Positions 12,716 to 54,165 of a DNA stretch of 64,000 nucleotides are shown here, piece by piece (the stretch's first letter is position 1; the number at the start of each line of letters is the position of its first letter). Below the pieces are notes generated by a model, which had not been told where the DNA came from, made no database searches, and was given only the letters and a program-made list of their open reading frames with translations. The stretch covers positions 62,001 to 126,000 of IMG/VR virus record IMGVR_UViG_3300034073_005389, one strand, 5' to 3'. The position numbers and the translations under genes are program-made.

Positions 12716-13489
12716 TTACTTAATATGCCTGGTTTTACTAACGCCTTCTAATAAATTTTGCTTAGAACTTAAAGGTCTTAAATTTGATAAAGACCAAGAT
12801 AGTAAAAAGTTATTTTCATTCATTGAAGAATATGGCAAAATAGATTGTGGAACTATATGATCTATTTGCCAAGTCCAAGTAGACACATCATTATCATCCC
12901 ACTTGCCTTTTTTATAAGAACCATAATTATCCCATCTCATCCAATAATCAAACTGCTTCTCTAAATGTACTTTTAACTCTTCAATAGAATATGGTAAATA
13001 TTCTAAACAAGATTTATTATTTTTACTATTATTGTTTTTAATTAAAGCTTTGTTTATGGCAGAAGAAACTACAGTTCTTAATGAATAAGCAATATCAAAC
13101 TTTCTTTTATTTTTATTATAAATTTTATGATTATTTATAATCCTATCTTTATTTAAAAGATAATATTGCTTATCATACTCTTTCTTTTTATCTTTATTAT
13201 TTTGATAATAAATTTTTGATTTATTATTTATTTTTTCTTTATTTTTATTTCTATATATTTTGTCTTTTATCTTATTTTTAACAATATTAGAAAGTCTTTT
13301 TAATTTTCTACAATTTTTACATTCTGACCTTAGTCCATCTTTAGATGCTTTGCGCTTGTCAAAATAACAAGCACAAAGCTCTTGACTGCAATTGCAACAA
13401 ACTTTACTTATCAGATTTGACCCAAGGCAACTTTGATATAAATAAAGTTTACTGGATATGTTGGCTGAACTCTTACAGTTATGTTCCAT
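12716..13489 (-). CDS. Free-standing HNH homing endonuclease (start uncertain)
   Basis: CxxC...CKNC zinc ribbon, Lys-rich linker, W.IDHIVPQS...WSLSNLRPL...N. Inserted between sheath and tube. Confidence 0.8.
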   Translation of the reverse strand: MEHNCKSSANISSKLYLYQSCLGSNLISKVCCNCSQELCACYFDKRKASKDGLRSECKNCRKLKRLSNIVKNKIKDKIYRNKNKEKINNKSKIYYQNNKDKKKEYDKQYYLLNKDRIINNHKIYNKNKRKFDIAYSLRTVVSSAINKALIKNNNSKNNKSCLEYLPYSIEELKVHLEKQFDYWMRWDNYGSYKKGKWDDNDVSTWTWQIDHIVPQSILPYSSMNENNFLLSWSLSNLRPLSSKQNLLEGVSKTRHIK

Positions 13490-16188
13490 TGTCTTGGATC
13501 CACTGAATCTCTTACTACTGACAAATCCGCAAAATTAGTGATTAATCCTTGTGAAACCAATGCATTTAACAAGATAACTGCACGAGTGTTAAGAATAGAT
13601 CCAGTGTCAGGTGTTTCGGGTTGACCAATGTAACCTACGAATCCAGCACGAAGTGCTTTTGCTACTCTATCTCTGATAAAGACAATTGATATCTCTTGCT
13701 CTTCAGGGAATCCACTTTGTGAGGTAGTTATACCCCAAACTACTCTACCTCCACCAGCTACTGGCTGCAATGTACAAACACCTGCTGCAGCCAATGACTC
13801 TAGAGTTAATGTAGAAAATTGTTTGTTGCGAAGAATTGTAAATCCACTGATTACTTTATTAGTCAATGGATTTTCAATTCTGGTATCAGCAGATTCATAA
13901 CCTGCCGCTGCTGCTGCTAAGTAGAAACCATCTATTAATAGATTTTGTCCGCTAGCCTGAACTACAATCTGATCAGGGTAGAAGTATACACATCTAAAGG
14001 TATTGCCGAATGAATCAGGTACAGAGTAATTAGCTAAGTCTTCGATATTGCCTGAAAGAACCTCAGTAACGTTATCTCCTTGAATTCCTTCTAGAATACC
14101 AATATCTTCTACTGCAGCTAAGCTAGCACCTGTAACATTATTAGGAGTTAATCCTGAAATAGCTCCTATAAACAATACTCTTTCTTTCTTATTGCGGATA
14201 TTGCTCATGGTCTTACAATGTTGTAATGCATTCTGGAACACTACAGAAATTGTTTGTCTTGGAAGTGGTACTACAATATCACATTCAACAGTTTCTAGTG
14301 AGGCTAGAGCATTGATCCAGCCAGCATCATAGAACGATGCATCTCTTGAATCAATAATGCTTACTCTTAATGCATATCCATTAGGAACTACGTTTTTGTT
14401 GATAACTACATAATTGCTAGTATCAGTAGGATCTAATACTTCATATCTCATGTTGCTTTCATTCACAATTGACATCTGTAATGTTACAGTGTTAGTTAAT
14501 GCATTAAAAGCAACGATATCGTATAAGCCATTGTTATCTAATGTAGACCCGGTTATTTTAACTCTGCGAGTTAAAATATTAGAAATTGTAGAGAAATCTA
14601 CGCCTGTTACTGTGTTGCTGTCAAAGCTGGCAGTAGTGCCTAACCCAGGTACTACGCTACCATCTGTACCGCTAGCAAGTGGTAAATCAGTATCTACATC
14701 AATTACTTGGAAAGCTACGTTACCAGTGTTTTCTAGTGTAAAGTCAGGTAATGGAGGTACATCTAATGTAACTGATAGTTTACCACCAGAAACACCAGTA
14801 ACAGTATAAGTACCTCTGTTACCTCTATTAACAGTATCAATTATTTTTAATTGTTTGCCTACATAAGTAGAATCAAAGACAATTGATGAGCTGAATACAC
14901 CCTGATCATAGAAAGCTAGATTTCTGCCGATATATCCATCAAATCCAGTAGCAATGGTAGCGATACTTTGTATTACTGTATAGTAATAAGAGTATCCACC
15001 AGGAGCAGGAGTATTATCATAAATAAACTGAGAAACAGTTGGGAATCCAGCCGTACCAAGTTTGTAGTACTCTAGTTTATTTGGTAATATCTGAGTTTCT
15101 ACGTTAGTAGCATTATTGGTAATAAAGAAGTGTATATTTGAATTAAAATCAGGCACTACGCCTAATGGAAGTGGGAAGATAAAATCATCATTATCTGTAG
15201 ATATTGCATCTACTGATTCTGCTAATAGATATGATGTTCTTCTTGGTAAGGCAGGAGCAGCTTGTACAGTAATGACTGCAGGGGCATTATTAGCAAAAGC
15301 TAATTGAGCGCCTAATGATAAGTTATTTGTTAAGCTAGGAAACCCATGTCTATTAACTACATCTAACATGCCTTGCATTAATAAAGGATCATTTAAAAAT
15401 GAAGAGGGTATGTAATTAGCTGTTAATGTATCATTTGTTATTAGTACGCCGCTAGAAACAATAATTGTAAATGCATCACCTTCTCTAAATGGAGAGAGTG
15501 TTACGGCTCCTACCTTAGTCTCATATATTGCAAAGCTGAGTACTCCATTGGTAACAGTTTGTCCATTAGCCACCCAGACAATAGGATTACCGTTGGCATC
15601 TAATTTAGCTCCAGATACAGAGCCAATAGCAATAAACTTAGCAGTTCCTGCGATAGGTTGATTTAATGGATTTCTTTGAACGGCAATACATCTAATTGTC
15701 CATATTTCTGGGGGAGTATTAGGATCTTGTAATGTTAAATTGCTTAAATATCCATCACCAACATTGCTAGTTAATGGTACATAAAAAGAACCGCCCTGAT
15801 CTAATAGATGGGCTTGTTGTAATTCTATTCTGCCGTTGGTGATATCAATTCTATAATCATATTTAAAATTAAAAGGATTTCCATCAATAGCGGCTTCTAA
15901 GCCTACTAATGGTATTCCATTTTTAAATAATGTAGTTCTATTAGAAATAAGTGGAAAATTAGTGGTGACGAAATGTCTACCATCTGCGCCGCTAGTTGAT
16001 GTATAACTGGGGTTAAGACCATCTTGTCCTCCACCTAAAGCTTGAGCGACAATAACTTCATCAGTGGAACCCTCGCCAATAATCGCCGCTAACCGAGCGC
16101 CTCCTGGAATTGCGACTCCACGAGTTTGAGTAATTACGTCGGTAAAAACTCCTGGTAAAACATTTGTTGATCCTGGTATATTAGCCAT
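13411..16188 (-). CDS. Tail sheath protein
   Basis: N-terminal PGVFTDV and C-terminal ISIVFIRD...YIGQP...VRVQPTYPVNFIYI are contractile sheath signatures; large central insertion. Confidence 0.9.
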   Translation of the reverse strand: MANIPGSTNVLPGVFTDVITQTRGVAIPGGARLAAIIGEGSTDEVIVAQALGGGQDGLNPSYTSTSGADGRHFVTTNFPLISNRTTLFKNGIPLVGLEAAIDGNPFNFKYDYRIDITNGRIELQQAHLLDQGGSFYVPLTSNVGDGYLSNLTLQDPNTPPEIWTIRCIAVQRNPLNQPIAGTAKFIAIGSVSGAKLDANGNPIVWVANGQTVTNGVLSFAIYETKVGAVTLSPFREGDAFTIIVSSGVLITNDTLTANYIPSSFLNDPLLMQGMLDVVNRHGFPSLTNNLSLGAQLAFANNAPAVITVQAAPALPRRTSYLLAESVDAISTDNDDFIFPLPLGVVPDFNSNIHFFITNNATNVETQILPNKLEYYKLGTAGFPTVSQFIYDNTPAPGGYSYYYTVIQSIATIATGFDGYIGRNLAFYDQGVFSSSIVFDSTYVGKQLKIIDTVNRGNRGTYTVTGVSGGKLSVTLDVPPLPDFTLENTGNVAFQVIDVDTDLPLASGTDGSVVPGLGTTASFDSNTVTGVDFSTISNILTRRVKITGSTLDNNGLYDIVAFNALTNTVTLQMSIVNESNMRYEVLDPTDTSNYVVINKNVVPNGYALRVSIIDSRDASFYDAGWINALASLETVECDIVVPLPRQTISVVFQNALQHCKTMSNIRNKKERVLFIGAISGLTPNNVTGASLAAVEDIGILEGIQGDNVTEVLSGNIEDLANYSVPDSFGNTFRCVYFYPDQIVVQASGQNLLIDGFYLAAAAAGYESADTRIENPLTNKVISGFTILRNKQFSTLTLESLAAAGVCTLQPVAGGGRVVWGITTSQSGFPEEQEISIVFIRDRVAKALRAGFVGYIGQPETPDTGSILNTRAVILLNALVSQGLITNFADLSVVRDSVDPRQWNITVRVQPTYPVNFIYIKVALGQI

Positions 16189-16202
16189 ATAAAATTACTC
16201 CA

Positions 16203-16885: not shown

Positions 16886-17713
16886 TTATATTTGAAGTAA
16901 TAAATCTGTAATACTGACTTCTGTATTAATGGCTAAATTTTGTGGTACAGGGGCGGCAGGATTATCTATGTTTTGGAAAGTAACAGCAAAAACAATTGTA
17001 TCAATCAAATTTCCTACAGGAATCTCTCTTCTCCACTCTGTTCTAATGTCTAAATTAATACTTTGTCTAAATAATTTATCATTTCTATCATCAGATTCTG
17101 AGGGAGCGCCAATACTAATTGGTTTTATTACAATACCTACATCTACTAAAGATTCAAAACTAATTTCTGTTAAACAAATACCAATTAATTCTACTAAATC
17201 ATCTCTGGCACGCAAACTTCTAGATAATACATCAATACTAATTGAAGTATCCCAAACACCTGCAGTAATAAATGAGACAGGTCTTCTAATTAAACTTTGA
17301 TTTCCATACCCATCTTCAAAAATAGTAGTATCATACTGTATACCACCTTTCTCTCTATTAATAGAGATAGGTACGTATTTGCTATTACCACTTTTTATTA
17401 AAATAGCCGGATAATGTATGCCGTCATATCTATAATTTTCACCTATAAATACTCTAGTGCTTAAATTACTAGTTAAGCTAAGGTCTGGATTAGCGCCAGG
17501 ACCATATGGTAAATCCGCTCCTGGAGGCAAATCTGTATGATCTACAGTATTAGCAAATCCCCATTGATCTTTAGAGTAATGATAATAGCTGTCCTTAGAA
17601 AAATAATCACGTAAAGTAGCAATTATTATTTCTTTAGGATACACTAACATCGAAGACTGTATGACGTTATGTATTTTGTATAAATCTGAGGTAAATATAT
17701 TATTAGTTGACAT
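16886..17713 (-). CDS. Putative tail terminator/completion protein
   Basis: Upstream of the sheath; YPAILIK...ISIDVLSRS...RDDLVE pattern. Confidence 0.5.
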   Translation of the reverse strand: MSTNNIFTSDLYKIHNVIQSSMLVYPKEIIIATLRDYFSKDSYYHYSKDQWGFANTVDHTDLPPGADLPYGPGANPDLSLTSNLSTRVFIGENYRYDGIHYPAILIKSGNSKYVPISINREKGGIQYDTTIFEDGYGNQSLIRRPVSFITAGVWDTSISIDVLSRSLRARDDLVELIGICLTEISFESLVDVGIVIKPISIGAPSESDDRNDKLFRQSINLDIRTEWRREIPVGNLIDTIVFAVTFQNIDNPAAPVPQNLAINTEVSITDLLLQI

Positions 17714-17716
17714 ATT

Positions 17717-20700
17717 TTACCATCTATATTTAACTACTATTGGAGATAGTAAAAATTCAAACGGACCACCTGCATTTCTCTGTACAAAAATAAATCCAGA
17801 AACGCTTAATGGATATCTTTGAGATGTTTTATAATTTTTTGTAACATCTGTAGTTCCAGGTCCACCAGTCGTAGTATCAATACTTGTTAAATCAATATCA
17901 AGATATTGGGTAAATGTGCTTGTATTTATATTTGCGGCAGTAATCAAATCAAATGGGGCAGTGTTAGTGCCTCCTGTACCAATTACGTTAGTATCGCCAG
18001 AACCTGCAGTAGCAAAATTATCTAAACTAGGATATGCTGTACTAGAATTAACTTCATTATATTTATTAAGAACTATTTTAACATAACTATTAGGATCTAC
18101 AGTATATCCAAATTTTCTAATACCTAATTTAATATTTATAACTTTTACATTGTTAGGTAAATATTTAGTTAAATTTTCTTGATATGCTATTGCAAATTGA
18201 GTGGCAGCAACTGCATTATCTACAAGTCTTAAAACAAAAGATCTGCCTTCATTTAATAAACCCGGATTCAGTGTGTTTGCTGCAAGCATAGATGCATCTG
18301 TTGGAGTTACAAAATATTGAAAACCAACATTGCTAGATCCATCCCAATAAGGCTGTAAACCATTTGTTAACGGAACTGTGCCATAACCTGTTTGATTTTT
18401 ATTTCTTTCAATTACCCAATCTTTTGCATTTGGGAAAGAAGAAAAATCAATAACACTTTCATCTAATGTAGTGCTATCAATATAAGGAGTATCTAGAATA
18501 TTATCTACAACTAACCCATAAGTTTCTGATCCATCCCAAGCTGGAGATTCAAAATTTCTATAAGCAATATAAGATCCTATTGATGCATCTTTTCTATATA
18601 TTTTGTTACCAGTAATTGTATTAGATAATCCACTAACCATTACCAATCTCTTAAAGGTACTTGAACCAGTTAGACTTATTCCTTTTAATGTATTATTTGA
18701 AATAATACTGCTAGCTTGACAATTAATGTAACCTAAATTATAATAATATATAGAAGGTAAGAAAGTGGTTGGTTGTAGCCAATATCCTGTACATACACTA
18801 TTTCCTTGTATTAGACAAGCAACATCATTTCCTTCTGGTGGGGAAGAGGTTGGAACAATAGCATGTTTGTTAGACCCTACGTAAATTGCATACCCTATAG
18901 TATATATATTTGATATTAAGTAAGTACTTGATACCGAAGTTGAATATGCTGTTAAATAATTATTTATTATTTGTAAATACGAACTCTCTTCATAAGTAAT
19001 AGCTGTTGTAATAAAATTACATTTATTATTCTGTATAGTTACTACGCCAGAAGGATAAGCGCATCTATTTACAGTAGCTCCACCAGAAGTGCCTACAACT
19101 GCAAAGTAAATGCCAGTACTACTAGCGGAATAAATTAGATGACAATTATTTCCAGTAATATTTAATCCAGATTCCTTATCAGAATATTGGTTTACAACAG
19201 TAGAATTATCTATTTTATTTGGAGTAGCAGTCCAATAACCAATTGCGCCACAAGTATTGTTATTTACAAAACAATTTTGTGGTACTAAACCTGGATAAAC
19301 CATATTTCCAGAACTAGTTTGTGATGTTATTGCAAATAATTGCTTACTATTGCAATAATTATTGCTAATATTTACATTAAACAATGTAGGTTGTGGCTGT
19401 GAAGATATGCCTGCAGCAGAACTATTAATAATACCAATAGCAGCTCTTACATCTAAAACAGTTGAAGCTAAAGTATGATTAAAATTACAATTAGTAATTT
19501 TTAAATTTTTAAGAGCACTATTGCTAGTAGATAATTGGAAGTTAATAAAGCTAAATCTATTATCACTAGAAGTAGTAGGACTATAATTAAAAATACAATT
19601 ATCAATTGTAAAATTAGATAAAGTCCCTGGAACAATAGAGTAAATATAGCCTCTACCCGTATTCACATAATCTGATACAGAATAGGTAACAACTGGTAAA
19701 CCATCAGCTATGCCTAATGGATCAGTAGTAGCGTCATACACATCTGGAGATAAAGCAGAAAATGGATCATAACTAGAAGTTATTGACAAATTTTGTAAAA
19801 AAGTACCATCAGAATTGGTATTTCTTAAAAATTGATTGTAATAACCTGTAAAAGTAGAATTGGTAATATTTACATTGGGGCAGTTATTAATTGTAAAAAT
19901 ATCTCCTGGCACATAACCATCTATGGCTGGAGAATTGTATGTAACAGTAAAATTACTCTCTGTTACATCAAAGTTAGTGGCATTTGCTAATCTAAATACT
20001 GCCCCACCAGTAGCCGTAGGAGAAGTAGTATAGTCAACAGTTAAAGAACAATTGTTTATTTTAAAATTATCTGAAGAAGCAACGTTAAAAATAACATTGT
20101 TAGCTGGAGACGCTACAGTTGGTGTATTAATGGTAATATCACAATTATCAAACATAACATTATTTAATGTTGTATTGCAAGCAATTCCTCCATTAAATTC
20201 TAATGTAACATTTTTAAATGTAATATTAGACCCAAAAGTTACCAAACCATTAAAAGTAAGCAATGCACTATTTAAACCATCAATTATTACATTTGAATTA
20301 AAATCTAATAAAATATTTTGATTTATAACTCCAGTAATTGCATCTGCACCCTTAACAACTGCCGTTCCATTAAAAGAATTATTATATTTAATCCAATTAA
20401 ATATTGAACTAATATTTTTAAAATTACCTTGAGCATTAGCAGAAGTTAATTTTAAAATTAAGTTAGTATCTACATCATTTACATATCTACGAGCATCATT
20501 TGCTTGTAAAGTAATTGTTACTGGAACTAGTGTAACTGTAGATGCTACAACGTACAGTATAGCTAAGTCTTTACGATTATTTATAATATTTGAAAATGTA
20601 ACTGCATCTAAATTATATGTAGTGGCATTTACAGGATTATATGCTGTAAATATTCTATTAGGATTAGAAGGAGTATTCAATACTGGGTCATAGTCTAATA

Positions 20701-23700
20701 AAGGAATTGTCTCATATTCTCCTTTATCATTTACACACAACGCCCAATTTATATTGCTAGCAGGTGATTCTTTTAGCGTAGGTACAACTACAGTTGTATC
20801 ATTCATGGCAATAAACTTACCATTTACTAATGCTAAGCCACCAGTTAAATATATTTGACCATCATTAGGATTAGGATCTACTCCTTTATCTTCTAAATCA
20901 AATCCTCTAATTACTCCATTACCATGTAAATACTTCTCTCCTAAAGCAATATAATTAAGAGCTGAAGTAGTTAAATCTTTTTCACTAGTATTTCCAAATT
21001 GCCTTTCATCTCGTAAATGAGTTACTTTGTTGGTAACACCATTAACTTGACATGTGCCTAATAACATAATCTCTTGATCTAGAGATAATGTAGGGAATAA
21101 TTGAAAATCAATTAAACCGTCTACTACAGGTGATACTGTCAAGTTAACATCAAAAATAATGTCTATGTAATCTACGTTTGTTTCATCATAGAATCTAACA
21201 ACATCACCTAGCCTGCCAAAAGTAAGAGGTCCTTGTTGTGTATAATTAGATCCGTCATAAGAACATAAATATCCGTTAAATAAACCATTTGCGGTTACAC
21301 TTAACATTCTTAATGTTATTTTGTTTACTGTACCAAATTGATAGCCTCTTAATTTAGGAGATATTTTAATAATATTAAGCTTAGCTAATTCAGTATTAGT
21401 AAATAAAGTGGTAGCTCCATTTACAGTAAAATTTCCTCCACTAATATTAATTCTGCCACGCTCTTGTGTAAATGTTTTACCATTTTGGTCTACATATACT
21501 TCAAAATGACGTTTGAATGGTCCCACTACAGAGAAATCTGAGGCATTTTCTCCATTAAAAGTAACAGAATCAGAGTTAAAGTAAATTGCTACTTGATATC
21601 CATCATAGCCATCTAATGATACTGGTGGCGATAAGCCATTACCATGAATAGCATCATATACAGTAATTTCAGTAGATGGATTTGGAGGGCAAGTAACGCA
21701 TAAACTTTCAATAATAAATCTACCATAATTTATTAAACCTAAATTTTCAATAGGCTGAACTACAAGAGTTTTACCTACTGCCAATCCAGAAGTTTCTAAA
21801 TCATATGGTATACGATATGTAGTTTGAACTCTTCCATTGGGACCTGGGACTATATTTCTGTTTACAATCGTAGCTGTCCAATATCCATCACCATAAGTAT
21901 CTAGTACTTGATCTGGCTCTAGTGCTAGTTTGTCTTTTTCAACTCCATTTACATAATAATTATTTCTTTTTAATGGAACAAATAATTTTGTAGGTAATTG
22001 TGCAGATTCTGGAGAGGCATAAGTTGCGGAATATGGGGGGCTAGCTATATTTGATCCTCCTACACCAAAACCCAAGGGATCTACAGGAGAAAATGTGGCA
22101 GCCGCAAATAAACCTACTACGTTATTAGGAAAATTTAAAGCTGTAGCTGCTGGATCGTATACTCCTATAGAATCTACAATCCCACTAAGTATAGAGAAAG
22201 ATGCATTATTATAAGGATCTGCTAAAGCAATTCCAAATTCTCCTTGATATTGGAAAGCTACAAATCTATAATTATATCCATTTTGTCTAAATGCGTTATT
22301 TGTTGCCTCTACAATAGAATCTAAGGTATATTTACCAGGACTAGCACCTGCATTACCAGTCACGTCAATAGCTGGTAGAATAGTATATCCATCATCTGGA
22401 TTACCAGTAGGATACAAAGCTAAATAAAGAGAGTAGTGAGAGTTATCAAAAACGTCTGGATTAAATCCTAAACCTAATGCCATTGCCCCTGTAGGATTAG
22501 AAACAATTAAACTAGGCATGGCATTAAATTGATTATTAGCAGCAGAAAGTGCCAATGCCCCATATTTATTTATGTTAAATAAAGGCTTGTCAATTCTAGC
22601 ATAACCATCAGTAGTATACTTTAAGTTCTTACCATTAACTCTCACTACATATTTTTTATTGCCAACGCTTTGAATATATTTCTTTTCTTTGATAATAAAC
22701 GGAACTTCTACTGTTCCATAGTTAACTCTAACTATATCTCCTATTTTAACTGCCGCAAACTGAGCATCAAAAGCATTTGAGCTAACTAAATTTGATGCTG
22801 GAGTAAATTCAATAATATCATCACCATTATTAATATTATCTACTGGTGCGCTAGCAGTTCCATTATTAAGCAAATATGTAGTAACTTGAGTAACAGGAAC
22901 AATAGGCTGACCATAACCATCTTGTAATAAGCTAGAAGATCTAGAAACCCTAGAAATACCATTAGAATATAAATTCTGTATTCTAGTCCCTAATAAGAAA
23001 ATACTAGCACTATCAATATACTCCGCAAACTGCTGTAAATCCGTGGCTGTTTGTGGAATTGTTGAAAATCTAGTAGTATTTAAATAAATACCGCTAGAAA
23101 CGTGAGCATGAGTAGCTGGATAAGTAGAGCCGTCATTAGTAATTACTAATGTGGCTGGAACTGTAGGAGATCCATCAGCAAATTGATGCTCCAACAATTC
23201 AGTGTTCATGTCATTAATAACGGCATAACCGCTAGCATTATTTCTATCTGTTCTAAATTTATTTTTTAATAATTGAGCAGGATCATTTGTTACATCAATT
23301 TGGCTTAAAGTGTGGCGATAAATCATGCCAAGTAAATGTGGCTCTAGTTTAGAACCGGAAACTCCAATCCATCCTAAAGCACTATTCACCCCATTAGATA
23401 AGTCAGTAATATAGTTAAATAAATCTTGAGTTCTATGATCTAGTCTTAATTTAGACTCTGGAATCTCTGCATTAACAGAAATTTGGTCATTAGTAATAGG
23501 TAAAGTAACTAATCCTAAGCTAGTTAATGCTGATGACTTTATAGTCCCATCTGGATTTAAAGAAATACCTAGCCTGGCAGATATAGATGAAGTGGTTCCA
23601 TCTCCATCTAATCCTAGATATTGCTCAATATTAAAAACCGCATCTCTAACTGCATTAATTGCCTCTCCGCCAATTTCTGTTAAATTGTCATTAACAATTG

Positions 23701-23743
23701 GCAAAGTAGCATCATCATCAAAAGATATAGGAAAGTTACTCAT
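17717..23743 (-). CDS. Large virion appendage protein with C-terminal parallel beta-helix (tailspike/fibre-like)
   Basis: 2008 aa; N-terminal MSNFPISFDD anchor; Asn/Cys-ladder repeats (NITGNNC, IQNNKC, ISNNTL, ITGNKI); 7 DGY motifs. Confidence 0.6.
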   Translation of the reverse strand: MSNFPISFDDDATLPIVNDNLTEIGGEAINAVRDAVFNIEQYLGLDGDGTTSSISARLGISLNPDGTIKSSALTSLGLVTLPITNDQISVNAEIPESKLRLDHRTQDLFNYITDLSNGVNSALGWIGVSGSKLEPHLLGMIYRHTLSQIDVTNDPAQLLKNKFRTDRNNASGYAVINDMNTELLEHQFADGSPTVPATLVITNDGSTYPATHAHVSSGIYLNTTRFSTIPQTATDLQQFAEYIDSASIFLLGTRIQNLYSNGISRVSRSSSLLQDGYGQPIVPVTQVTTYLLNNGTASAPVDNINNGDDIIEFTPASNLVSSNAFDAQFAAVKIGDIVRVNYGTVEVPFIIKEKKYIQSVGNKKYVVRVNGKNLKYTTDGYARIDKPLFNINKYGALALSAANNQFNAMPSLIVSNPTGAMALGLGFNPDVFDNSHYSLYLALYPTGNPDDGYTILPAIDVTGNAGASPGKYTLDSIVEATNNAFRQNGYNYRFVAFQYQGEFGIALADPYNNASFSILSGIVDSIGVYDPAATALNFPNNVVGLFAAATFSPVDPLGFGVGGSNIASPPYSATYASPESAQLPTKLFVPLKRNNYYVNGVEKDKLALEPDQVLDTYGDGYWTATIVNRNIVPGPNGRVQTTYRIPYDLETSGLAVGKTLVVQPIENLGLINYGRFIIESLCVTCPPNPSTEITVYDAIHGNGLSPPVSLDGYDGYQVAIYFNSDSVTFNGENASDFSVVGPFKRHFEVYVDQNGKTFTQERGRINISGGNFTVNGATTLFTNTELAKLNIIKISPKLRGYQFGTVNKITLRMLSVTANGLFNGYLCSYDGSNYTQQGPLTFGRLGDVVRFYDETNVDYIDIIFDVNLTVSPVVDGLIDFQLFPTLSLDQEIMLLGTCQVNGVTNKVTHLRDERQFGNTSEKDLTTSALNYIALGEKYLHGNGVIRGFDLEDKGVDPNPNDGQIYLTGGLALVNGKFIAMNDTTVVVPTLKESPASNINWALCVNDKGEYETIPLLDYDPVLNTPSNPNRIFTAYNPVNATTYNLDAVTFSNIINNRKDLAILYVVASTVTLVPVTITLQANDARRYVNDVDTNLILKLTSANAQGNFKNISSIFNWIKYNNSFNGTAVVKGADAITGVINQNILLDFNSNVIIDGLNSALLTFNGLVTFGSNITFKNVTLEFNGGIACNTTLNNVMFDNCDITINTPTVASPANNVIFNVASSDNFKINNCSLTVDYTTSPTATGGAVFRLANATNFDVTESNFTVTYNSPAIDGYVPGDIFTINNCPNVNITNSTFTGYYNQFLRNTNSDGTFLQNLSITSSYDPFSALSPDVYDATTDPLGIADGLPVVTYSVSDYVNTGRGYIYSIVPGTLSNFTIDNCIFNYSPTTSSDNRFSFINFQLSTSNSALKNLKITNCNFNHTLASTVLDVRAAIGIINSSAAGISSQPQPTLFNVNISNNYCNSKQLFAITSQTSSGNMVYPGLVPQNCFVNNNTCGAIGYWTATPNKIDNSTVVNQYSDKESGLNITGNNCHLIYSASSTGIYFAVVGTSGGATVNRCAYPSGVVTIQNNKCNFITTAITYEESSYLQIINNYLTAYSTSVSSTYLISNIYTIGYAIYVGSNKHAIVPTSSPPEGNDVACLIQGNSVCTGYWLQPTTFLPSIYYYNLGYINCQASSIISNNTLKGISLTGSSTFKRLVMVSGLSNTITGNKIYRKDASIGSYIAYRNFESPAWDGSETYGLVVDNILDTPYIDSTTLDESVIDFSSFPNAKDWVIERNKNQTGYGTVPLTNGLQPYWDGSSNVGFQYFVTPTDASMLAANTLNPGLLNEGRSFVLRLVDNAVAATQFAIAYQENLTKYLPNNVKVINIKLGIRKFGYTVDPNSYVKIVLNKYNEVNSSTAYPSLDNFATAGSGDTNVIGTGGTNTAPFDLITAANINTSTFTQYLDIDLTSIDTTTGGPGTTDVTKNYKTSQRYPLSVSGFIFVQRNAGGPFEFLLSPIVVKYRW

Positions 23744-24223: not shown

Positions 24224-25219
24224 CTATGTAGGAGTTATAGCGATAGAATCTTGTAAACTGGTAGCGTAACATTCACCATCTGTAAAGTATTGTGCATATA
24301 ACATCCACCTACCACCAACCGTAAATGTATTACCTGGTACATATAAAGATGCTACCCCATTTATTGGAATAGCAGTTCCTAAACTAAATACATAGCCATC
24401 TTCTGCCAGAAACTCTACATATCCGTCTGACGGATTATCTAAATTAGTGGCAGTAACTGTACCTACAACCATAATTGGATCTTCTTCTGGAAATACTGTA
24501 CCTCCATCTACACTAATTACAATGCTAGTCGGATCATTTTCAGTAGGAAAAACTAATAAACCAGACATTCCAGTAGGAGTTCGGCTAATATTATAACACT
24601 CAAACCCTTCATAAGTAGCTTGCAAATAATTAGATCTAGTTGCCAATGTAGTATAAGGAGGTATTTGTCCAACTGCCATACCATAACCGTCTAAAGGCTC
24701 AGATCCTAAATCTATGTATTCTGTATTGCTAGTATACAATTTAAAATTTACACTTCCTACAGTTACTGGAACAGCCCTACCAGTAGTAACTTCGGCTGTT
24801 ACTCTTTGAGTATACGCATAACAATAATATGAACCAATAGTAGGAGAAATAATATTAATTGATGTATTTTCTGGTTGTAAACCATATCTGATACTAGATG
24901 TTTGACTGGGAGCAAAAGAATTACTTACTCCTAAATATCTAGCAAATAATCTAACTGGACCAAATACCAAAGTAGCTACTGCAATTCCGACTCCTCTAGC
25001 TCCCAATGTGCCTGTGGCTAAAATATTATTTGTATTTTGGTCTACTATTTCAAAATCTCCAGTAGGATCTGGACCTCCAACAGTATTATTAGTTACTGTA
25101 ACTGAAAAAGTAACTACATCTCCGCAATAAGCAGGAGAAGGAGAAATGCTATCTAGCACAATTGTTGTGCTAGATAAATTTACTGGAGGAACTAACATTA
25201 ATCCAAAACCAATTGGCAT
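24224..25219 (-). CDS. Ig-like repeat (Big_3-like) virion protein
   Basis: Three ~100-aa beta repeats (VTFSVTVT...PTG.F..; VTAEVT...GSVNF; VGTVTA...GYVEF), each ending A.Y; 3 DGY motifs. Confidence 0.65.
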   Translation of the reverse strand: MPIGFGLMLVPPVNLSSTTIVLDSISPSPAYCGDVVTFSVTVTNNTVGGPDPTGDFEIVDQNTNNILATGTLGARGVGIAVATLVFGPVRLFARYLGVSNSFAPSQTSSIRYGLQPENTSINIISPTIGSYYCYAYTQRVTAEVTTGRAVPVTVGSVNFKLYTSNTEYIDLGSEPLDGYGMAVGQIPPYTTLATRSNYLQATYEGFECYNISRTPTGMSGLLVFPTENDPTSIVISVDGGTVFPEEDPIMVVGTVTATNLDNPSDGYVEFLAEDGYVFSLGTAIPINGVASLYVPGNTFTVGGRWMLYAQYFTDGECYATSLQDSIAITPT

Positions 25220-25220
25220 A

Positions 25221-26552
25221 TTACCCACAAACAGTTAATTGAACTACTACTAACCAGTTAATATTTGTCGCTGCAAGCGCTCCAGTATTAATAGAAAGAG
25301 TAGTACCTACGTTAGTAATACTGGGCGGAGTAATACCTCCTAAACCAGCACTTTGAGTATCAAAATACTGAGTAGCGCTCAATGCAGCTACTGTTCCAGT
25401 AGAATCAATAGTAAAACCTCTAGACATATTTGTTTGGTATGCTTCATTCACAGCTGGATTAGTATTTTTACCAACAATTAATATATCTGCTTTTACAATT
25501 GTACTGTTAGGCATTACATAGCTAAAAGCTACTGCCGGAGTAGCATTTGTAGTTAAAGTTGTTGCCCTATAGCTATAAACATATCTAGTGCCTCCACCCC
25601 AAATACTTGGATTTGGAATACTTCCAATAGCAAAATTATCACCATCTGATTGTTTTATATATAATTTTCCAGTACTAGCATAAAGTATAGCTCCGCCAGA
25701 TGGAACTCCTGCTCCTGGGTCAGTGGCTGCATTTTTAATATAAATAACACCGCTTCCAGTATTAGCAGGCATTTGTATATTAGTAATAGGAACAGTATTA
25801 CATAAACTTAATACTAATTGATTTTGAACTACTTCTGCTAATTCTACTAATGTAGTATTAACCCCGCCAGTAGATAACTGAACAGCTCCTTTTAATCCAG
25901 TGCCTCCTCCAGCATTCCCTCCTGAAAGAACTAAAGCTGCGCCATTAAAATTTACATCTGTAGTTGATTGGGCTGTAATATAAAATGAGCCAGCCGGACC
26001 AACATCCATATCATCTTGGGTAATAAACGCTTGTTGAGTTTTTTCAAAAGTTAATTTAGGTCCAAGTATTGTAACATAATTAAAAATTGGATCTCCAGAT
26101 AAATTTTGTACAAATTGATTTGTACTAGTCCCATATAAATCACTACCAGCTGTAAAGGCATTAGTTGCATTATCAGGATACCACCCAATACCATCCCAGG
26201 TTAATACTTGACCTACGGCTGAAGGAATAATTGGCTGTATAGGACTTCCCTGTAGTGCACTAACGGTAACGCTAGTCGCTGTACCAGAAATATCTCCAGA
26301 TAATTGTATAATACCTTTACTAGTAGTAGTAGCATCTGGTACGACAGGCGCTGTTACATAAGTGCTTAATATTTGTAAAGCACTTTGTACTGTAGTTTCT
26401 GTATATCCGTCAAAAGTTATGGCAGGGGACAAATCAATCTGAGTAGCATCATGTCTAAAGCTATATCCATCAATATGGTCTTGAAAATCATATCGATCTG
26501 TAACTAATCTACCTACACCTTTTACATAATTTGGTACTAAAGGATTACTCAT
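25221..26552 (-). CDS. Putative tail/neck fibre protein
   Basis: Fibre-type motifs PDATTTSKGIIQLSGD and GQVLTWDG; Gly/Thr-rich. Confidence 0.6.
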   Translation of the reverse strand: MSNPLVPNYVKGVGRLVTDRYDFQDHIDGYSFRHDATQIDLSPAITFDGYTETTVQSALQILSTYVTAPVVPDATTTSKGIIQLSGDISGTATSVTVSALQGSPIQPIIPSAVGQVLTWDGIGWYPDNATNAFTAGSDLYGTSTNQFVQNLSGDPIFNYVTILGPKLTFEKTQQAFITQDDMDVGPAGSFYITAQSTTDVNFNGAALVLSGGNAGGGTGLKGAVQLSTGGVNTTLVELAEVVQNQLVLSLCNTVPITNIQMPANTGSGVIYIKNAATDPGAGVPSGGAILYASTGKLYIKQSDGDNFAIGSIPNPSIWGGGTRYVYSYRATTLTTNATPAVAFSYVMPNSTIVKADILIVGKNTNPAVNEAYQTNMSRGFTIDSTGTVAALSATQYFDTQSAGLGGITPPSITNVGTTLSINTGALAATNINWLVVVQLTVCG

Positions 26553-26588: not shown

Positions 26589-28196
26589 TTATAATAAAAC
26601 GATCTCATGGGTATGCCCTAAAGCTTCCATTACTACTAACTGACCATTCTGAACAATTACTGGATGATTATGACCCTGCGAAACAGCGGTAGTTTGAGAC
26701 CAAGTTCCAGGATCTTTTTCGTTTCTAGTAACAGTATGTGTATGTGGGGGAATACCAGTAGTCATTCCAATTGTAGTATTTATTTTACTTGGGAACATAG
26801 ATGTATTTCTAAACACTCTAATTTGATAAGCTGGGTCAAATTTTCTAATTCTTTGTACCCTTAGTTTTTGACCACCTTGCAATTCTACAACTGTATTATT
26901 TCTAGTAACGCCTGCCACCTCATACCTAAACTCTTCATTATCATCCATATCAAACATAACAATAATATCTCTATTTTTAATAGTAGGTACTGTTAATGTC
27001 CATAAATCCATATTGAACTCAGACTCTAATCCAGCTTCTTGCATCTTTAAATTTTCTTCAGCAGGTCCAGGACGAACCATAATTCTTCCATCTGATCTTC
27101 TTGGATTAAAAAACTGCTGATAACCATACACAAATCCAGATCCATAACAATATGGACATCTATCTTGCTGATATTCTCTAGATGGAAGATAGCAATTACA
27201 ACGAATACCTGTTCTCATTCTTTGTATTAAAACAGCAGGTCTACCTGTCACACTTAATAATATTTCTTGTCTTTGATTATTATGGTCTTGTAAATTTAAA
27301 CCACGTAAAATATTCATATTTCCGTAGCCATCTATACATCCCATCTCCCCGCCAATGTAACTACCTACACAAGCTCCTGTTAATAATAATACTGGGTCAG
27401 TTCTATGATACCCGGCATAGTCATACATAGGAAATCCAGTATTAAATTGATCGCTAGCTGCTAAATCAGTGCTCAATAAATCTTTAGTTACTTGTTTGTA
27501 ACCATCTAATAATGTAGATGAGTAATTTGGATATTCAAATCTACATTGACCCATAAAAATACGATCAAATTCTGCTGACTCATATGGAGTAAAAAATACT
27601 ACTTCTGGATTCCAATTATAATATCCATCATATCCACCAACTGTATGACTTCTTGCATCAGTACCTAAAAACCCACGCTGATTAATATCCATTAATACTA
27701 AATTTTTATTTATAGTATCTATAAAAGAATACTCTACTAGCTCTACGCCTATTTTTACAATTCCATAAGAAGGGAAACCTTCTACATCCAATAATGGTAT
27801 TATTAAATCTGTCGAAGAAATATCTTGTCTTAAAATACTGTAAGGATAGGCACGCAAATCATCGTACGCAACTGGTAAAATACTATCTAAATTTAATAAA
27901 TTTGGATTATATTCTACAGGTCTAATTGAGAAAAAATATAACTGTCCAGGTATTAAATCAATAATGTTTGCCTGAGTGCTGCCGTTCAATGAAACGTATT
28001 TAACCCCCTCGGTAAATACATTTTCTTTTATTGTAGAGTAATATATATGATACGCAATCTTGTACCCATCGGCGTACCCATCTGTGTACGCCGGAAACCA
28101 TTTTAAATTAATGGTATAGCCATCTCCTAATGCCGTCACAGCATCGAGACCAACTCTTACTGGGTTAGTATAATTAATATTTGCATAATTAATCAT
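26589..28196 (-). CDS. Putative neck/head-closure protein with FN3-like N-terminus, Zn finger and His-rich tip
   Basis: LKW...YHIYY...YFFSIRP (FN3-like); CNC...CPYCYGSG; C-terminal HTH/HNH/HTH; 6 DGY motifs. Confidence 0.5.
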   Translation of the reverse strand: MINYANINYTNPVRVGLDAVTALGDGYTINLKWFPAYTDGYADGYKIAYHIYYSTIKENVFTEGVKYVSLNGSTQANIIDLIPGQLYFFSIRPVEYNPNLLNLDSILPVAYDDLRAYPYSILRQDISSTDLIIPLLDVEGFPSYGIVKIGVELVEYSFIDTINKNLVLMDINQRGFLGTDARSHTVGGYDGYYNWNPEVVFFTPYESAEFDRIFMGQCRFEYPNYSSTLLDGYKQVTKDLLSTDLAASDQFNTGFPMYDYAGYHRTDPVLLLTGACVGSYIGGEMGCIDGYGNMNILRGLNLQDHNNQRQEILLSVTGRPAVLIQRMRTGIRCNCYLPSREYQQDRCPYCYGSGFVYGYQQFFNPRRSDGRIMVRPGPAEENLKMQEAGLESEFNMDLWTLTVPTIKNRDIIVMFDMDDNEEFRYEVAGVTRNNTVVELQGGQKLRVQRIRKFDPAYQIRVFRNTSMFPSKINTTIGMTTGIPPHTHTVTRNEKDPGTWSQTTAVSQGHNHPVIVQNGQLVVMEALGHTHEIVLL

Positions 28197-30161: not shown

Positions 30162-30202
30162 GGATTATCCTTTGTACTAACACCATTATGGTATTGATTA
30201 TT

Positions 30203-31033: not shown

Positions 31034-31360
31034 AGCAGAGTAATTACCAAAGGGAGCAGAAACAATAATTTGGTATATTTCTGAATTAACTGCATTGTTT
31101 ACTGGGTTGATATAGCTTACATCAGCTAAGTAGCTGCCTACTGCCGTAGCTCCAGAAGGAAGAATAAATTCATAGTAATATAATCCAGTATCTAGTTTAA
31201 CCATAGGTTGTGGATATCCTGCAGCTAGAGTAAGAGATGGAAAAATAATTCTAGACACAAAGGGAATGGATGGAGAATCAGTTCTGGTACCATAACCATC
31301 TTTTGTTTCTAAGAAGAAACTAGCTTTTTGACCTGGAAAAAAATTTAGTGTTTGTGCCAT
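31019..31360 (-). CDS. Small Ig-like virion protein
   Basis: Resembles the N-terminal domain of 29262..30161 (KDG.G...S.P...G.Y.Y.F..P). Confidence 0.5.
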   Translation of the reverse strand: MAQTLNFFPGQKASFFLETKDGYGTRTDSPSIPFVSRIIFPSLTLAAGYPQPMVKLDTGLYYYEFILPSGATAVGSYLADVSYINPVNNAVNSEIYQIIVSAPFGNYSASVAI

Positions 31361-44699: not shown

Positions 44700-45383
44700 T
44701 CAGGGTCCAACGGGTGGGTTGAAATAGAAGGTAACGAAGGTAAATTGACGTGGTGAAGCGCCTAAGCCTGAGGGGCTGTTTAGAGCGCTGACGAGGTAGC
44801 TAGGAGTATTGACTAATGAGCCATTGGTCTCGAAGTCAATTAAAGTAGCTACTACTGGAGCGCCACCTACTGCAGCAGGTGAGCCTACTGGAGTTAATTG
44901 TCCTGTTGAGGTATAGGTAAGGGGAGCGCCAGCTGATAGACCTACGTTGGTGGGTTGTAGACCGGTAGCAACAGCGGTATCAACTGCATCAAGTGATACA
45001 GCGTATACGCCGGGTTGGTGCCAGCAGGTTACTTTGCCTGAACCTGTAGCGGTGTTTGGTCCTAATACAACGCCTGAGGTAACTTTACCAACTGTACCAC
45101 CTACTACTGAACCGAAGAGGGTGCCGTAACCAGCAATACCTTCGTCAGCTAACATAAGAGGACGTGAAGTTGAAAGAAGATCAAAAGTTACAACTGTGCG
45201 CTTAGCAGTGCCTGATGGATTGACGTAACCGTCAAATACGTCAGCTGCAGCTAAATCAGGTGAGCTTAGGTTTAATGAAACAAAAGTTACTACTTCGCCA
45301 CCGAGGTAGCTGTTGATTTGTGTATCGTAACCGTCGAATTGACCGAGTGGGTTACCAGCTTGATTTACTAGTTTAAGAGCCAT
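44700..45383 (-). CDS. Putative capsid decoration/cement protein
   Basis: Upstream of the MCP gene with similar codon bias; TATGSGKVTCW motif; 2 DGY motifs. Confidence 0.55.
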   Translation of the reverse strand: MALKLVNQAGNPLGQFDGYDTQINSYLGGEVVTFVSLNLSSPDLAAADVFDGYVNPSGTAKRTVVTFDLLSTSRPLMLADEGIAGYGTLFGSVVGGTVGKVTSGVVLGPNTATGSGKVTCWHQPGVYAVSLDAVDTAVATGLQPTNVGLSAGAPLTYTSTGQLTPVGSPAAVGGAPVVATLIDFETNGSLVNTPSYLVSALNSPSGLGASPRQFTFVTFYFNPPVGP

Positions 45384-50619: not shown

Positions 50620-50641
50620 TTTATTTCCTATATTCTATGCC

Positions 50642-53435: not shown

Positions 53436-53475
53436 ATGTTCCTCCAACTTCATATATATCATCAAAATCAAAATT

Positions 53476-54165
53476 CTAAAGCCATAAAAATTCTAGAGAT
53501 ACATTGAGCGGAGAAGGTGGGGCGGTAACCATAGCTACAGCTGGGTGGATACTACTAGGTCTTCTAGTGGTTAAGAAGCCATATTCGCTGACGTACAAAT
53601 TAGCTCTAACGGGATATTGTTGATTTGTTTCGTACTGATCGGTTTGGGCGAACATTCTATTAAACCACACGGTCATTCTACCGGATCCTTGGGTACTATC
53701 ATCACCTGGGATATTGGCGACTTGGTAGGTATAGTTAACGATAGTACGGATGGCATTAGGTTTACCTGAGCCGGTGAGGTCGAAGTTAAGAGGAGTACCT
53801 GCGACGAAGGTAATTACGCCATTTACGGGGTTAAGGACAACGTTAACGGTGGAGGTAAAGCTATTGGCTATGATATTAGGTTTACGCAATTCTGCTTTAA
53901 TATCTATGGGTGTGACGAGATATCCATCTGGACCTGGGACACCGACAGCGGGAACAATAACGACTTCGTTCCAGGAGACGTTGGTGAAGGCACGAGTTTT
54001 GATATCATCGATAATACCTAAAGGTGCGGTACCATTGGAGACGGTTGCCATAACTTGATTACCGATGACGGTGAGTTCGGCTATCATGCCAGGTTGAAAT
54101 TCTGCCGAAGGGTCACAAATAAAGCTGGCTGGCAAGGCATTAGAGACTTGTACTAAGCGTAACAT
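53476..54165 (-). CDS. Putative capsid decoration protein, paralog of 44700..45383
   Basis: MLRLVQ start and STQGSGRMTVW motif; 1 DGY motif. Confidence 0.5.
   Translation of the reverse strand: MLRLVQVSNALPASFICDPSAEFQPGMIAELTVIGNQVMATVSNGTAPLGIIDDIKTRAFTNVSWNEVVIVPAVGVPGPDGYLVTPIDIKAELRKPNIIANSFTSTVNVVLNPVNGVITFVAGTPLNFDLTGSGKPNAIRTIVNYTYQVANIPGDDSTQGSGRMTVWFNRMFAQTDQYETNQQYPVRANLYVSEYGFLTTRRPSSIHPAVAMVTAPPSPLNVSLEFLWL

What the first reader, a model, noticed from the sequence alone, without database searches (positions are those of the whole stretch)
13411..54165. A D-G-Y tripeptide recurs across outer virion proteins: candidate virion-wide modification or docking tag
Seen, by manual count: about 29 DGY in 12 mostly unrelated proteins. 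Counts are sheath 2, terminator 1, 2008-aa appendage 7 (including LDGYDGY), Ig protein 3, fibre 2, neck 6 (including DGYADGY), adaptor 2, 113-aa 1, 667-aa 1, 119-aa 1, and the two decoration-like proteins 2+1. With rough frequencies (D 6%, G 8%, Y 5%) only 1-2 would be expected in these ~6200 residues. I found none in the MCP, protease/scaffold, internal proteins, tape measure, tube, hub, spike or nucleases. Codons vary (GATGGTTAT, GACGGTTAC, GATGGCTAT, GATGGATAT, GATGGGTAC), so selection is on the peptide. One site was doubled by a 12-nt tandem duplication (28062-28082). Inference: a surface-loop sequon for a Tyr/Asp-directed modification (glycosylation, phosphorylation, crosslinking) or a common docking site for a decorating protein. 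The sites lack the DxDx prefix of Ca-binding DxDxDG loops.
Basis: partly seen in the sequence, partly recalled or inferred. Interest (0 to 1): 0.88.

Follow-up and report, generated by a model that had tools for sequence, protein, structure and literature searches.

The report
DGY tripeptide recurring on phage virion surface
Asp-Gly-Tyr occurs about ten times too often, and has been gained again and again, in surface loops of the tail, neck and decoration proteins of a large clade of 350-480 kb phages; it looks like a recognition tag for an unknown modifying enzyme or binding partner, which nobody has described.

Summary
There are 29 DGY in 12 ORFs and none in the other 47 (20,751 aa). Composition predicts 3.1 (Poisson p 1e-18), and DGY is by far the most extreme of all 8,000 tripeptides. 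Codons at the sites follow normal usage and the DNA pattern is in frame, so selection acts on the peptide.

The effect is clade-wide. The window is part of a 361-kb IMG/VR phage contig. In 80 related loci DGY occurs 514 times against 57 expected.

In alignments of the 12 families, DGY occupies 90 columns: 9 conserved and 64 sporadic (11.6 expected). That corresponds to 169 inferred gain/loss events, 6-7 times more per unit of composition than DGF, NGY, DGT, DGS and 12 other controls. Gains cluster at indel-prone loops. They often arrive as loop insertions or tandem doublets. In the sheath they lie only in the non-core decoration part.

Permutations of D, G and Y, known sequons and DxDxDG loops are not enriched.

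Distant sheaths of 1,000 aa or more show the same enrichment (14x). Ordinary sheaths and T4 show about 3x.

Function is unproven. I found no writer enzyme in about 95 kb of the structural module and no literature. My best reading is a surface motif read in trans, probably a Tyr-modification sequon. The main rival is a purely structural turn module.

The parts
13411..16188 (-). Tail sheath, 925 aa, with 2 DGY: residue 145 (DNA 15748-15756) and residue 417 (DNA 14932-14940).
   Evidence: PHROG sheath hits; homologues carry PF04984 and PF17482; Foldseek matches the phi812, T4 gp18 and KP1 sheaths. Site 417 is DGY in 67 of 72 homologues. Site 145 is DGY in 13 of 72, needing at least 6 changes on the tree. 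All 18 DGY columns of the family lie at reference residues 59-603, outside the conserved C-terminal core.
16886..17713 (-).
   Evidence: DGY(GN) is kept in 54 of 58 homologues. No Pfam, PHROG or PDB sequence match.
17717..23743 (-). 2008-aa giant tail-associated protein with 7 DGY at residues 275, 379, 451, 619, 711, 714 and 1275 (DNA 22913-22921, 22601-22609, 22385-22393, 21881-21889, 21605-21613, 21596-21604, 19913-19921).
   Evidence: The family has 33 DGY columns; residues 275, 451 and 619 are conserved in 25-26 of 29 homologues and the rest are sporadic. In 6 of 29 a hairpin tip carries an inserted (G)DGY(N).
24224..25228 (-). 334-aa Ig-like protein with 3 DGY at residues 180, 268 and 277 (DNA 24683-24691, 24419-24427, 24392-24400).
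   Evidence: Pfam Big_3_5, E 1.5e-14; 8 DGY columns among 5 homologues.
25221..26552 (-). 443-aa fibre-like protein with 2 DGY at residues 28 and 48 (DNA 26463-26471, 26403-26411).
   Evidence: Pfam DUF5907 repeat; both sites are sporadic, in 5 of 18 and 3 of 18 homologues.
26589..28196 (-).
   Evidence: The N-terminus is FN3-like. Residue 231 is DGY in 19 of 19 homologues and residue 289 in 16 of 19. The FN3 loop reads KTN in most relatives, DGY in two, and DGYADGY here. The AF2 model is poor, pLDDT 52.
29262..30161 (-).
   Evidence: Residue 111 is DGY in 11 of 11 homologues; residue 153 is DGY in 3 of 11 and DSY in most others. No PDB sequence match.
31019..31360 (-). 113-aa protein with 1 DGY at residue 21 (DNA 31292-31300).
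   Evidence: 5 DGY columns among 13 homologues.
33133..35136 (-). 667-aa virion structural protein with 1 DGY at residue 275 (DNA 34306-34314).
   Evidence: PHROG 1645 'virion structural protein', E 2e-106. Its N-terminus is paralogous to the 119-aa ORF.
35145..35504 (-). 119-aa protein with 1 DGY at residue 31 (DNA 35406-35414).
   Evidence: The site lies in a 4-residue loop insertion (APDG / ALDG) found in 3 of 11 sequences; one relative (L094) then reads DGYTPTDGYGPD.
44700..45383 (-).
   Evidence: Residue 51 is DGY in 17 of 18 homologues; residue 17 is DGY in 5 of 18 and DGL in the others.
53476..54165 (-). 229-aa head-region protein with 1 DGY at residue 80 (DNA 53920-53928).
   Evidence: Sporadic site, DGY in 2 of 13 homologues.

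Best explanation
DGY is a real short linear motif under selection as a peptide. It is displayed on indel-prone loops and hairpin tips of the outward-facing parts of a fixed subset of virion proteins: the sheath decoration domains, the 2008-aa tail-associated giant protein, Ig/FN3-bearing fibre-like proteins, several neck-region proteins and two small head-region proteins.

Shown: the motif is order-specific and residue-specific, clade-wide, repeatedly gained, inserted and duplicated, and absent from the capsid, tube, tape-measure, hub and enzyme genes.

Inferred: one trans-acting factor reads the tripeptide. Most likely this is a phage-encoded cytoplasmic enzyme that modifies the Tyr, with Asp at position -2 as the specificity determinant. 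Each gained DGY would then add one more modified site to the virion surface, the way sequons build a glycan coat on other viruses. The chemistry (sugar, phosphate, nucleotide or crosslink) and the writer are unknown.
For: - Enrichment: 29 against 3.1 expected, p 1e-18, the top tripeptide.
- Peptide level: codon usage is normal and 29 of 30 DNA matches are in frame.
- Clade-wide: 514 against 57 expected in 80 related loci. Homologues of the carrier families have 463 against 30.6; homologues of the non-carrier families have 2 against 22.8.
- Turnover: 90 DGY columns, 64 of them sporadic against 11.6 expected (p 1e-26). DGY is also the most frequent conserved tripeptide.
- Events on trees: 169 gain/loss events, or 88.7 per unit of composition frequency, against 3-16 for 16 control tripeptides. 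The same sheath positions were gained 4-7 times.
- Specificity: 38% of all DG are followed by Y, 48% of all GY are preceded by D, and 63% of all DxY have G. DGY occurs 491 times against 9-97 for the other five orders.
- Location: sporadic sites lie next to indels in 80% of cases against 50% for random residues, p 1e-6.
- Mode of gain: loop insertions that carry DGY, and tandem doublets.
- Sheath: all DGY columns lie outside the conserved core.
- Wider reach: mutually distant sheaths of 1,000 aa or more have 30 against 2.2 expected, again the top tripeptide.
Against: - There is no direct evidence of any modification.
- No glycosyltransferase, kinase or similar writer appeared in the 64-kb window or in the flanking contig stretches read. 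The only protein-modification genes seen are a SET-domain ORF that is absent from relatives' loci and a PTP-family phosphatase.
- At some conserved sites D and G are invariant while Y varies (sheath residue 417), which looks structural.
- Ordinary sheaths and the T4 structural region already show about 3x enrichment, so part of the signal may reflect a general preference of tail folds.
- Exposure is inferred, not measured.
- DGY load in the sheath and in the giant protein does not co-vary among genomes.
- The capsid protein is exposed yet has no DGY.
Confidence: 0.4

Rival explanations
1. DGY is a purely structural module. Asp-Gly makes a tight turn and the Tyr starts or caps the returning strand. 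This lineage favours it for fast folding or stability of exposed beta-hairpins in decoration domains. Nothing reads it in trans.
For: DG is a classic turn dipeptide (established knowledge). Gains occur mostly where a Gly already exists, such as LGS, NGQ, DGT and TGT. In the AF2 sheath model DGY 145 sits at a loop-to-strand boundary. At sheath residue 417 D and G are invariant while Y is replaced by T, E, I, V or G in 5 sequences. Baseline enrichment is about 3x in ordinary sheaths and in T4.
Against: NGY should be at least as good a turn, and DGF should pack as well, yet neither is enriched: they have 0.9x sporadic columns and 12-13 events per unit against 88.7 for DGY. Doublets such as DGYDGY, DGYADGY and DGYGDGY cannot both be two-residue hairpin tips. 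Homologues fold without the inserted DGY loops. The beta-rich tube, hub and capsid families have none in dozens of homologues.
Confidence: 0.3
2. DGY is a non-covalent contact point. It could be a common docking epitope for a coating or decorating protein of the virion. It could instead be a minimal ligand site, with Asp plus Tyr binding a glycan or a metal ion, that makes the particle surface adhesive.
For: The same evidence for a surface-displayed, order-specific, repeatedly gained motif applies. Asp and Tyr are typical sugar-binding and Fe(III)-binding residues (established knowledge). The clade carries conserved small ORFs of unknown function among the carrier genes, for example the 121-aa ORF at 23785-24150, which has 30 homologues and no DGY.
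Against: A tripeptide in many different structural contexts is a poor stable docking site. No partner was identified. No Pfam lectin or cell-wall-binding repeat is found in the carriers. The invariance of the motif across phages that presumably infect different hosts argues against host-glycan specificity.
Confidence: 0.2
3. The count is a chance, compositional or DNA-level artefact, or is inherited from one shared domain.
For: None beyond the fact that homologues are not independent samples.
Against: Shuffles never exceed 10. Markov correction still leaves 29 against 8.5. Codons vary and the other five reading frames have 0-1 matches. The 12 carriers share no BLAST similarity except the 667-aa and 119-aa pair. 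Tree-aware event counts with identical treatment of controls still single out DGY.
Confidence: 0.02

Closest known systems
N-X-S/T sequons and the glycan shield of enveloped viruses; atypical sequons of chlorovirus PBCV-1 Vp54, which is glycosylated by virus-encoded cytoplasmic enzymes (review PMC9614988)
   Same: A three-residue motif on exposed parts of virion proteins, gained, lost and duplicated during evolution. In chloroviruses the machinery is virus-encoded and works without the ER.
   Different: Here the candidate acceptor is Tyr (or Asp), not Asn. No enzyme or glycan is known. The viruses are tailed phages. N-X-S/T itself is not enriched in the window: 199 against 209 expected.
General O-glycosylation motif D-(S/T)-(A/I/L/V/M/T) of Bacteroidota (PMC8550257, PMC12871550)
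   Same: A three-residue motif that begins with Asp and marks many unrelated surface proteins.
   Different: The acceptor is Ser or Thr, and the modification happens outside the cytoplasm on host proteins. That motif is not enriched here: 61 against 61.4 expected.
Glycosylated mycobacteriophage virions (own knowledge: Freeman et al. 2023, Cell Host Microbe) and Tyr-linked S-layer glycans of Paenibacillus and Thermoanaerobacter (own knowledge)
   Same: They set precedents for phage-encoded glycosylation of capsid and tail subunits, and for O-glycosylation of Tyr in bacteria.
   Different: The mycobacteriophage sites are Ser/Thr-rich C-terminal tails. S-layer Tyr glycosylation is extracytoplasmic and has no DGY sequon.
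Asx-Gly beta-turns (type I' hairpins) and the tyrosine corner (LxPGxY)
   Same: A turn-forming Asp-Gly followed by an aromatic residue at the start of a strand. Many sites lie at loop/strand boundaries.
   Different: NGY and DGF are not enriched. The tyrosine corner needs Gly at position Y-2, whereas here Gly is at Y-1. Tandem doublets do not fit.
DxDxDG calcium-binding loops; YG / cell-wall-binding repeats (consensus NDGYYF...)
   Same: Both contain DG or DGY.
   Different: No D.D.DG occurs anywhere in the window. No roughly 20-aa periodic repeat and no Pfam CW_binding hit is found in any carrier.

Membership tests
Post-translational modification sequon (glycosylation-type) | A short motif over-represented on exposed parts of target proteins, with evolutionary gain and loss. 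| tested here: met
Post-translational modification sequon (glycosylation-type) | A covalent modification present on the motif residue. | not testable with these tools
   Needs mass spectrometry or cryo-EM of virions.
Post-translational modification sequon (glycosylation-type) | A cognate writer enzyme encoded by the phage or the host. | tested here: inconclusive
   None found in the window plus about 31 kb of flanks, about 95 kb of a 366-kb genome. The rest of the genome was not read.
Type I' Asx-Gly beta-hairpin / structural turn motif | The motif sits at a tight turn between two antiparallel strands. | tested here: inconclusive
   In the AF2 sheath model residue 145 lies at a loop-to-strand boundary and residue 417 lies inside a long strand call. 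The model of the 535-aa protein is too poor to use. No coordinates were available.
Type I' Asx-Gly beta-hairpin / structural turn motif | Equivalent turn formers (NG) and equivalent aromatics (F) should be similarly favoured. | tested here: not met
   NGY, DGF and NGF are at 0.9-1.2x in sporadic columns, against 5.5x for DGY. Events per unit are 10-13 against 88.7.
Tyrosine corner | Gly at position Y-2, with consensus LxPGxY. | tested here: not met
   Gly is at Y-1. DG.Y occurs only 3 times in the window.
DxDxDG calcium-binding loop | Asp at positions -4 and -2 before DG. | tested here: not met
   0 of 29 sites, and no D.D.DG anywhere in the window.
YG / cell-wall-binding repeats | Tandem repeats of about 20 aa recognised by Pfam CW_binding models. 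| tested here: not met
   No such Pfam hit in any carrier protein. The flank logo is nearly flat.
Bacteroidota O-glycosylation motif | D-(S/T)-(A/I/L/V/M/T) enriched in the target proteins. | tested here: not met
   61 observed against 61.4 expected.

The most novel reading that the evidence does not exclude
Huge phages with decorated tails carry a dedicated, so far unknown protein-modification system. It recognises D-G-Y and modifies the tyrosine, for example by O-glycosylation, on dozens of surface loops of the sheath, tail appendages, neck and head decoration. This would give the virion an enzymatically written coat whose density evolves through gain and loss of a tripeptide.
Probability: 0.3. 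Interest if true: 0.9.

Novelty: new variant of a known kind. Interest (0 to 1): 0.7.

Why it matters
If DGY is a sequon or docking tag, it would be the first virion-wide short linear motif described in tailed phages. It would point to an unknown tyrosine-directed modification or coating system in a very large, uncultured clade: more than 700 sheath homologues, on contigs of up to 480 kb.

It would also give a simple sequence handle. Counting DGY could predict which phage proteins are surface-exposed, and profiling genes against DGY load could find the writer or reader.

If it proves purely structural, it is still an unusual case of strong, lineage-specific convergent selection for one exact tripeptide.

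Tried and rejected
- DNA-level motif: rejected. Codons follow normal usage and the other five reading frames are empty.
- Composition or chance: rejected.
- One shared domain: rejected. There is no BLAST similarity among the carriers except the 667-aa and 119-aa pair.
- Sticky loops rich in D, G and Y in any order: rejected. The other five orders are not enriched.
- Extended motif: the flanks are nearly flat. Position -1 favours L or V about 2x, +1 favours G or A about 2x, and +3 favours P 2.4x. Conserved sites tend to read DGYG(N).
- Avoidance in non-carrier families: 2 against 22.9 expected. About 15 other tripeptides are equally depleted because homologues are not independent, so I do not claim avoidance.
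- Co-variation of DGY load between the sheath and the giant protein across 40 genomes: none, rho 0.06.
- PDB sequence searches with family profiles for the sheath and the 535-, 275-, 299- and 227-aa proteins gave nothing useful beyond a weak FN3 match.
- The AF2 model of the 535-aa protein was too poor to use.
- Contigs that carry two distant DGY-rich sheaths were too short to give context.
- Walking the source contig left and right found more large structural ORFs and the terminase, but no candidate writer.
- Literature searches for a DGY or Asp-Gly-Tyr motif in phages, and for Tyr glycosylation of virions, found nothing relevant.
- Cluster look-up gave no names for the relatives.


Full report
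**1. The observation**

I took the longest non-overlapping ORFs of the window: 59 ORFs, 20,751 aa. The other 47 ORFs hold none.

- Per-protein composition predicts 3.13 overall and 1.36 in the 12 carriers. A first-order Markov model predicts 8.45.
- DGY is the most extreme of all tripeptides (Poisson p 1e-18). The runner-up has p 2e-5.
- Within-protein shuffles give a mean of 3.12 and never more than 10 in 5,000 trials.
- DGF, NGY, DGT, DGS, EGY, SGY and DxY with other middle residues are near expectation.
- Codons at the sites follow general usage: GAT 23 and GAC 6; GGA 12, GGT 9, GGC 5 and GGG 3; TAT 23 and TAC 6.
- GAYGGNTAY occurs 30 times on the coding strand, 29 of them in frame, and never on the other strand. 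The signal is therefore in the peptide, not the DNA.
- The doublet at 28062-28082 is GATGGGTAC-GCC-GATGGGTAC. Both copies share two rare codons, which fits a recent 12-nt duplication. The DGYDGY doublet in the 2008-aa protein uses different codons.
- No D.D.DG exists in the window.

**2. Where the window comes from and what the genes are**

The window is positions 62,001-126,000 of IMGVR_UViG_3300034073_005389 (361 kb). This is the same genome as JGI contig Ga0310130_0000007 (366 kb).

- GenBank phages hold no close relative. The best sheath match is 28-31% identical over part of the protein.
- Metagenomes hold a very large clade: more than 700 sheath homologues, on contigs of up to 480 kb.
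- The 925-aa ORF is a sheath by PHROG, by the Pfam domains of its homologues and by Foldseek.
- Pfam confirms the Ig (Big_3_5), FN3 and collagen assignments.
- The major capsid protein is a split gene: 43062-43406 plus 41146-41865, interrupted by a LAGLIDADG endonuclease gene. It has no DGY.
- The labels 'terminator', 'neck', 'adaptor' and 'decoration' could not be verified.
- The 12 carriers are unrelated by BLAST, except that the N-terminus of the 667-aa protein is a paralogue of the 119-aa ORF.

**3. The enrichment is clade-wide and family-specific**

- In 80 loci around related sheath genes (51-83% identity), DGY occurs 514 times against 57 expected.
- With 117 loci covering most of the DGY region, homologues of the 12 carrier families have 463 against 30.6 expected. 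Homologues of the non-carrier families have 2 against 22.8.
- I do not count that depletion as evidence. About 15 other tripeptides are equally depleted in that set, which was chosen because DGY was absent from the window's copy.

**4. Turnover of the motif**

- Alignments of the 12 families contain 90 DGY columns.
- Nine are conserved in at least 75% of sequences: sheath residue 417; 275-aa residue 134; 2008-aa residues 275, 451 and 619; 535-aa residues 231 and 289; 299-aa residue 111; 227-aa residue 51.
- DGY is the most frequent conserved tripeptide. It is followed by the overlapping GYG and YGN, because conserved sites often read DGYG(N).
- Sixty-four columns are sporadic (at most 25% of sequences), against 11.6 expected (p 1e-26). 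DGF, NGY, NGF and DGS lie at 0.9-1.2x.
- On family trees DGY needs 169 changes. That is 88.7 per unit of composition frequency, against 3-16 for 16 control tripeptides treated identically.
- In the sheath the same positions were hit repeatedly. NGQ became DGY 5 times, and TAT or TGT became DGY 4 times. At reference residue 509, DGT or DGV versus DGY needs 7 changes on the tree. LGS versus DGY needs 6 changes for 13 sequences. Part of this may be recombination rather than mutation.
- D and Y tend to appear together, without DGS-type or LGY-type intermediates.
- In the carrier families 38% of DG are followed by Y, 48% of GY are preceded by D, and 63% of DxY have G.
- Only the order D-G-Y is enriched: 491, against 9-97 for the other five permutations.

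**5. Structural context**

- Sporadic sites lie within 6 columns of an indel in 80% of cases, against 50% for random residues (p 1e-6).
- Many gains are loop insertions at hairpin tips. In the giant protein NYG--TVEV becomes NYAGDGYNIEV. In the sheath ILT---RR becomes IGTDGYY. One inserted sheath loop carries two DGY. An FN3 loop goes from KTN to DGY to DGYADGY. One relative of the 119-aa ORF reads DGYTPTDGYGPD.
- All 18 DGY columns of the sheath family map to reference residues 59-603. This is the part inserted between the conserved terminal core segments, which faces outward in solved sheaths such as T4 gp18 and phi812 (the orientation is established knowledge of those structures).
- In the AF2 sheath model (pLDDT 66 overall, 70-90 over residues 70-610), DGY 145 lies at a loop-to-strand boundary and DGY 417 lies inside a long strand call.
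- No model coordinates were available, so I could not compute solvent exposure.

**6. Phyletic reach and background**

- Among representatives of the sheath family clustered at 50% identity, distant members of 1,000 aa or more have 30 DGY against 2.2 expected. DGY is the top tripeptide there, and all sites I inspected (five such sheaths) lie in the N-terminal extra domains.
- Members under 700 aa have 19 against 6.1. Part of that comes from a core DG(F/Y)Y motif.
- Controls: 40 kb of Bacillus phage G gives 3 against 2.3, and 50 kb of the T4 structural region gives 10 against 2.75.
- So a mild excess of about 1.3-3.6x may be general in myovirus proteins. The 9-20x excess seen here is particular to phages with heavily decorated tails.

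**7. Search for a cause**

- The known three-residue sequons are not enriched: D(S/T)(AILVMT) 61 against 61.4, and N-x-S/T 199 against 209.
- The window holds no glycosyltransferase, kinase or radical-SAM gene.
- It does hold a 120-aa SET-domain ORF (28884-29246, plus strand). This ORF is absent from the relatives' loci, so it is unlikely to write a clade-wide mark.
- It also holds a PTP-family phosphatase (62747-63520). That is a weak lead towards tyrosine phosphorylation.
- Flanking contig stretches contain further large structural ORFs with a few more DGY: 2 in a 728-aa ORF, 1 in a 1363-aa ORF and 1 in a 1526-aa ORF. They also contain the terminase.
- The literature search found nothing on such a motif.

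**8. Interpretation**

The data establish motif-level positive selection for an exact, ordered tripeptide on variable surface loops of a fixed set of virion proteins.

A structural turn explanation accounts for DG. It also accounts for conserved sites where Y is dispensable (sheath residue 417) and for the general 3x background. It does not explain:
- the exclusion of NGY and DGF;
- the tandem doublets;
- the inserted DGY loops;
- the absence of the motif from the beta-rich tube, hub and capsid families.

Recognition in trans explains these points. An enzyme reading a three-residue sequon is the commonest known way for such a pattern to arise. A docking epitope or a ligand micro-site is less likely but not excluded.

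I therefore favour a Tyr-directed modification sequon (confidence about 0.4 for a trans-read motif with modification as the preferred form). The structural module comes next (0.3), then non-covalent docking or ligand binding (0.2).

**9. Caveats**

- ORFs were called mechanically.
- Homologues are not independent samples.
- Alignment errors in variable regions inflate column and event counts, but the controls were processed the same way.
- Exposure is inferred.
- Only about a quarter of the genome was inspected for enzymes.

Noticed in passing
window 41146-43406 (minus strand): The major capsid protein gene appears to be split. A conserved 114-aa ORF (43062-43406) and a 239-aa ORF (41146-41865) are separated by a LAGLIDADG_2 homing-endonuclease ORF (41972-42910). 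The 239-aa ORF matches the C-terminal two thirds of PHROG 2522 'major head protein' (E 2e-59). The arrangement suggests an intron with its endonuclease.
   Followed up: partly
window 56554-61302 (minus strand): A 1582-aa ORF carries an intein (Hint / Intein_splicing plus LAGLIDADG_3, residues about 103-480). It is followed by a stretch similar to a head maturation protease (PHROG 18299, residues 477-586).
   Followed up: partly
window 28884-29246 (plus strand): A 120-aa SET-domain (lysine methyltransferase-like) ORF lies on the opposite strand inside the tail/neck gene block (Pfam SET, E 9e-15). No homologue occurs in the relatives' loci. A recent paper reports that methylation of a phage tail protein matters for infectivity (PMC13445384).
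   Followed up: partly
window 62747-63520 (minus strand): A 257-aa protein of the protein-tyrosine-phosphatase superfamily (Y_phosphatase3 31.5 bits, Y_phosphatase2 30.8 bits, both above the Pfam cut-offs). The pattern scan of IMG/VR found only the source contig itself.
   Followed up: partly
window 12716-13489, 16203-16805, 30188-31033, 37025-38206, 38196-40340, 41972-42910, 43482-44678, 52263-53471, 54213-55040, 61310-61909: Homing-endonuclease-type genes (HNH, LAGLIDADG, GIY-YIG, endonuclease VII-like) are unusually dense among the structural genes. The HNH-like ORF 12716-13489 overlaps the 3' end of the sheath gene by 79 nt.
   Followed up: no
window 26589-28196 (minus strand): The 535-aa 'neck' protein has an FN3-like N-terminus. 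It has an invariant Cys cluster (C333, C335, C347, C350). It also has three invariant C-terminal H-x-H pairs (H485/H487, H509/H511, H528/H530). H-x-H pairs are typical of metal-binding fibre or needle tips, so it may be a fibre-like protein rather than a neck protein.
   Followed up: no
window 35600-36904 (minus strand): A 434-aa collagen-repeat tail-fibre-like ORF has no homologue in any related locus fetched and no DGY. It is probably a recently acquired or exchanged fibre gene.
   Followed up: no
L123 (phage T4, 76000-125999): The T4 structural region has 10 DGY against 2.75 expected. They lie in gp7, gp8, gp12, gp18, gp27 and gp28, in three Seg endonucleases and in UvsW. DGY may therefore be mildly over-represented in myovirus proteins in general.
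   Followed up: partly
P0207, P0211, P0212, P0227, P0255 (distant long sheaths): These sheaths share a recurring context in an N-terminal extra domain: ...NNQ.L.L.IS.. DGYGN....Y.K.LVNK. This is a conserved DGY hairpin in a domain family I did not identify.
   Followed up: no
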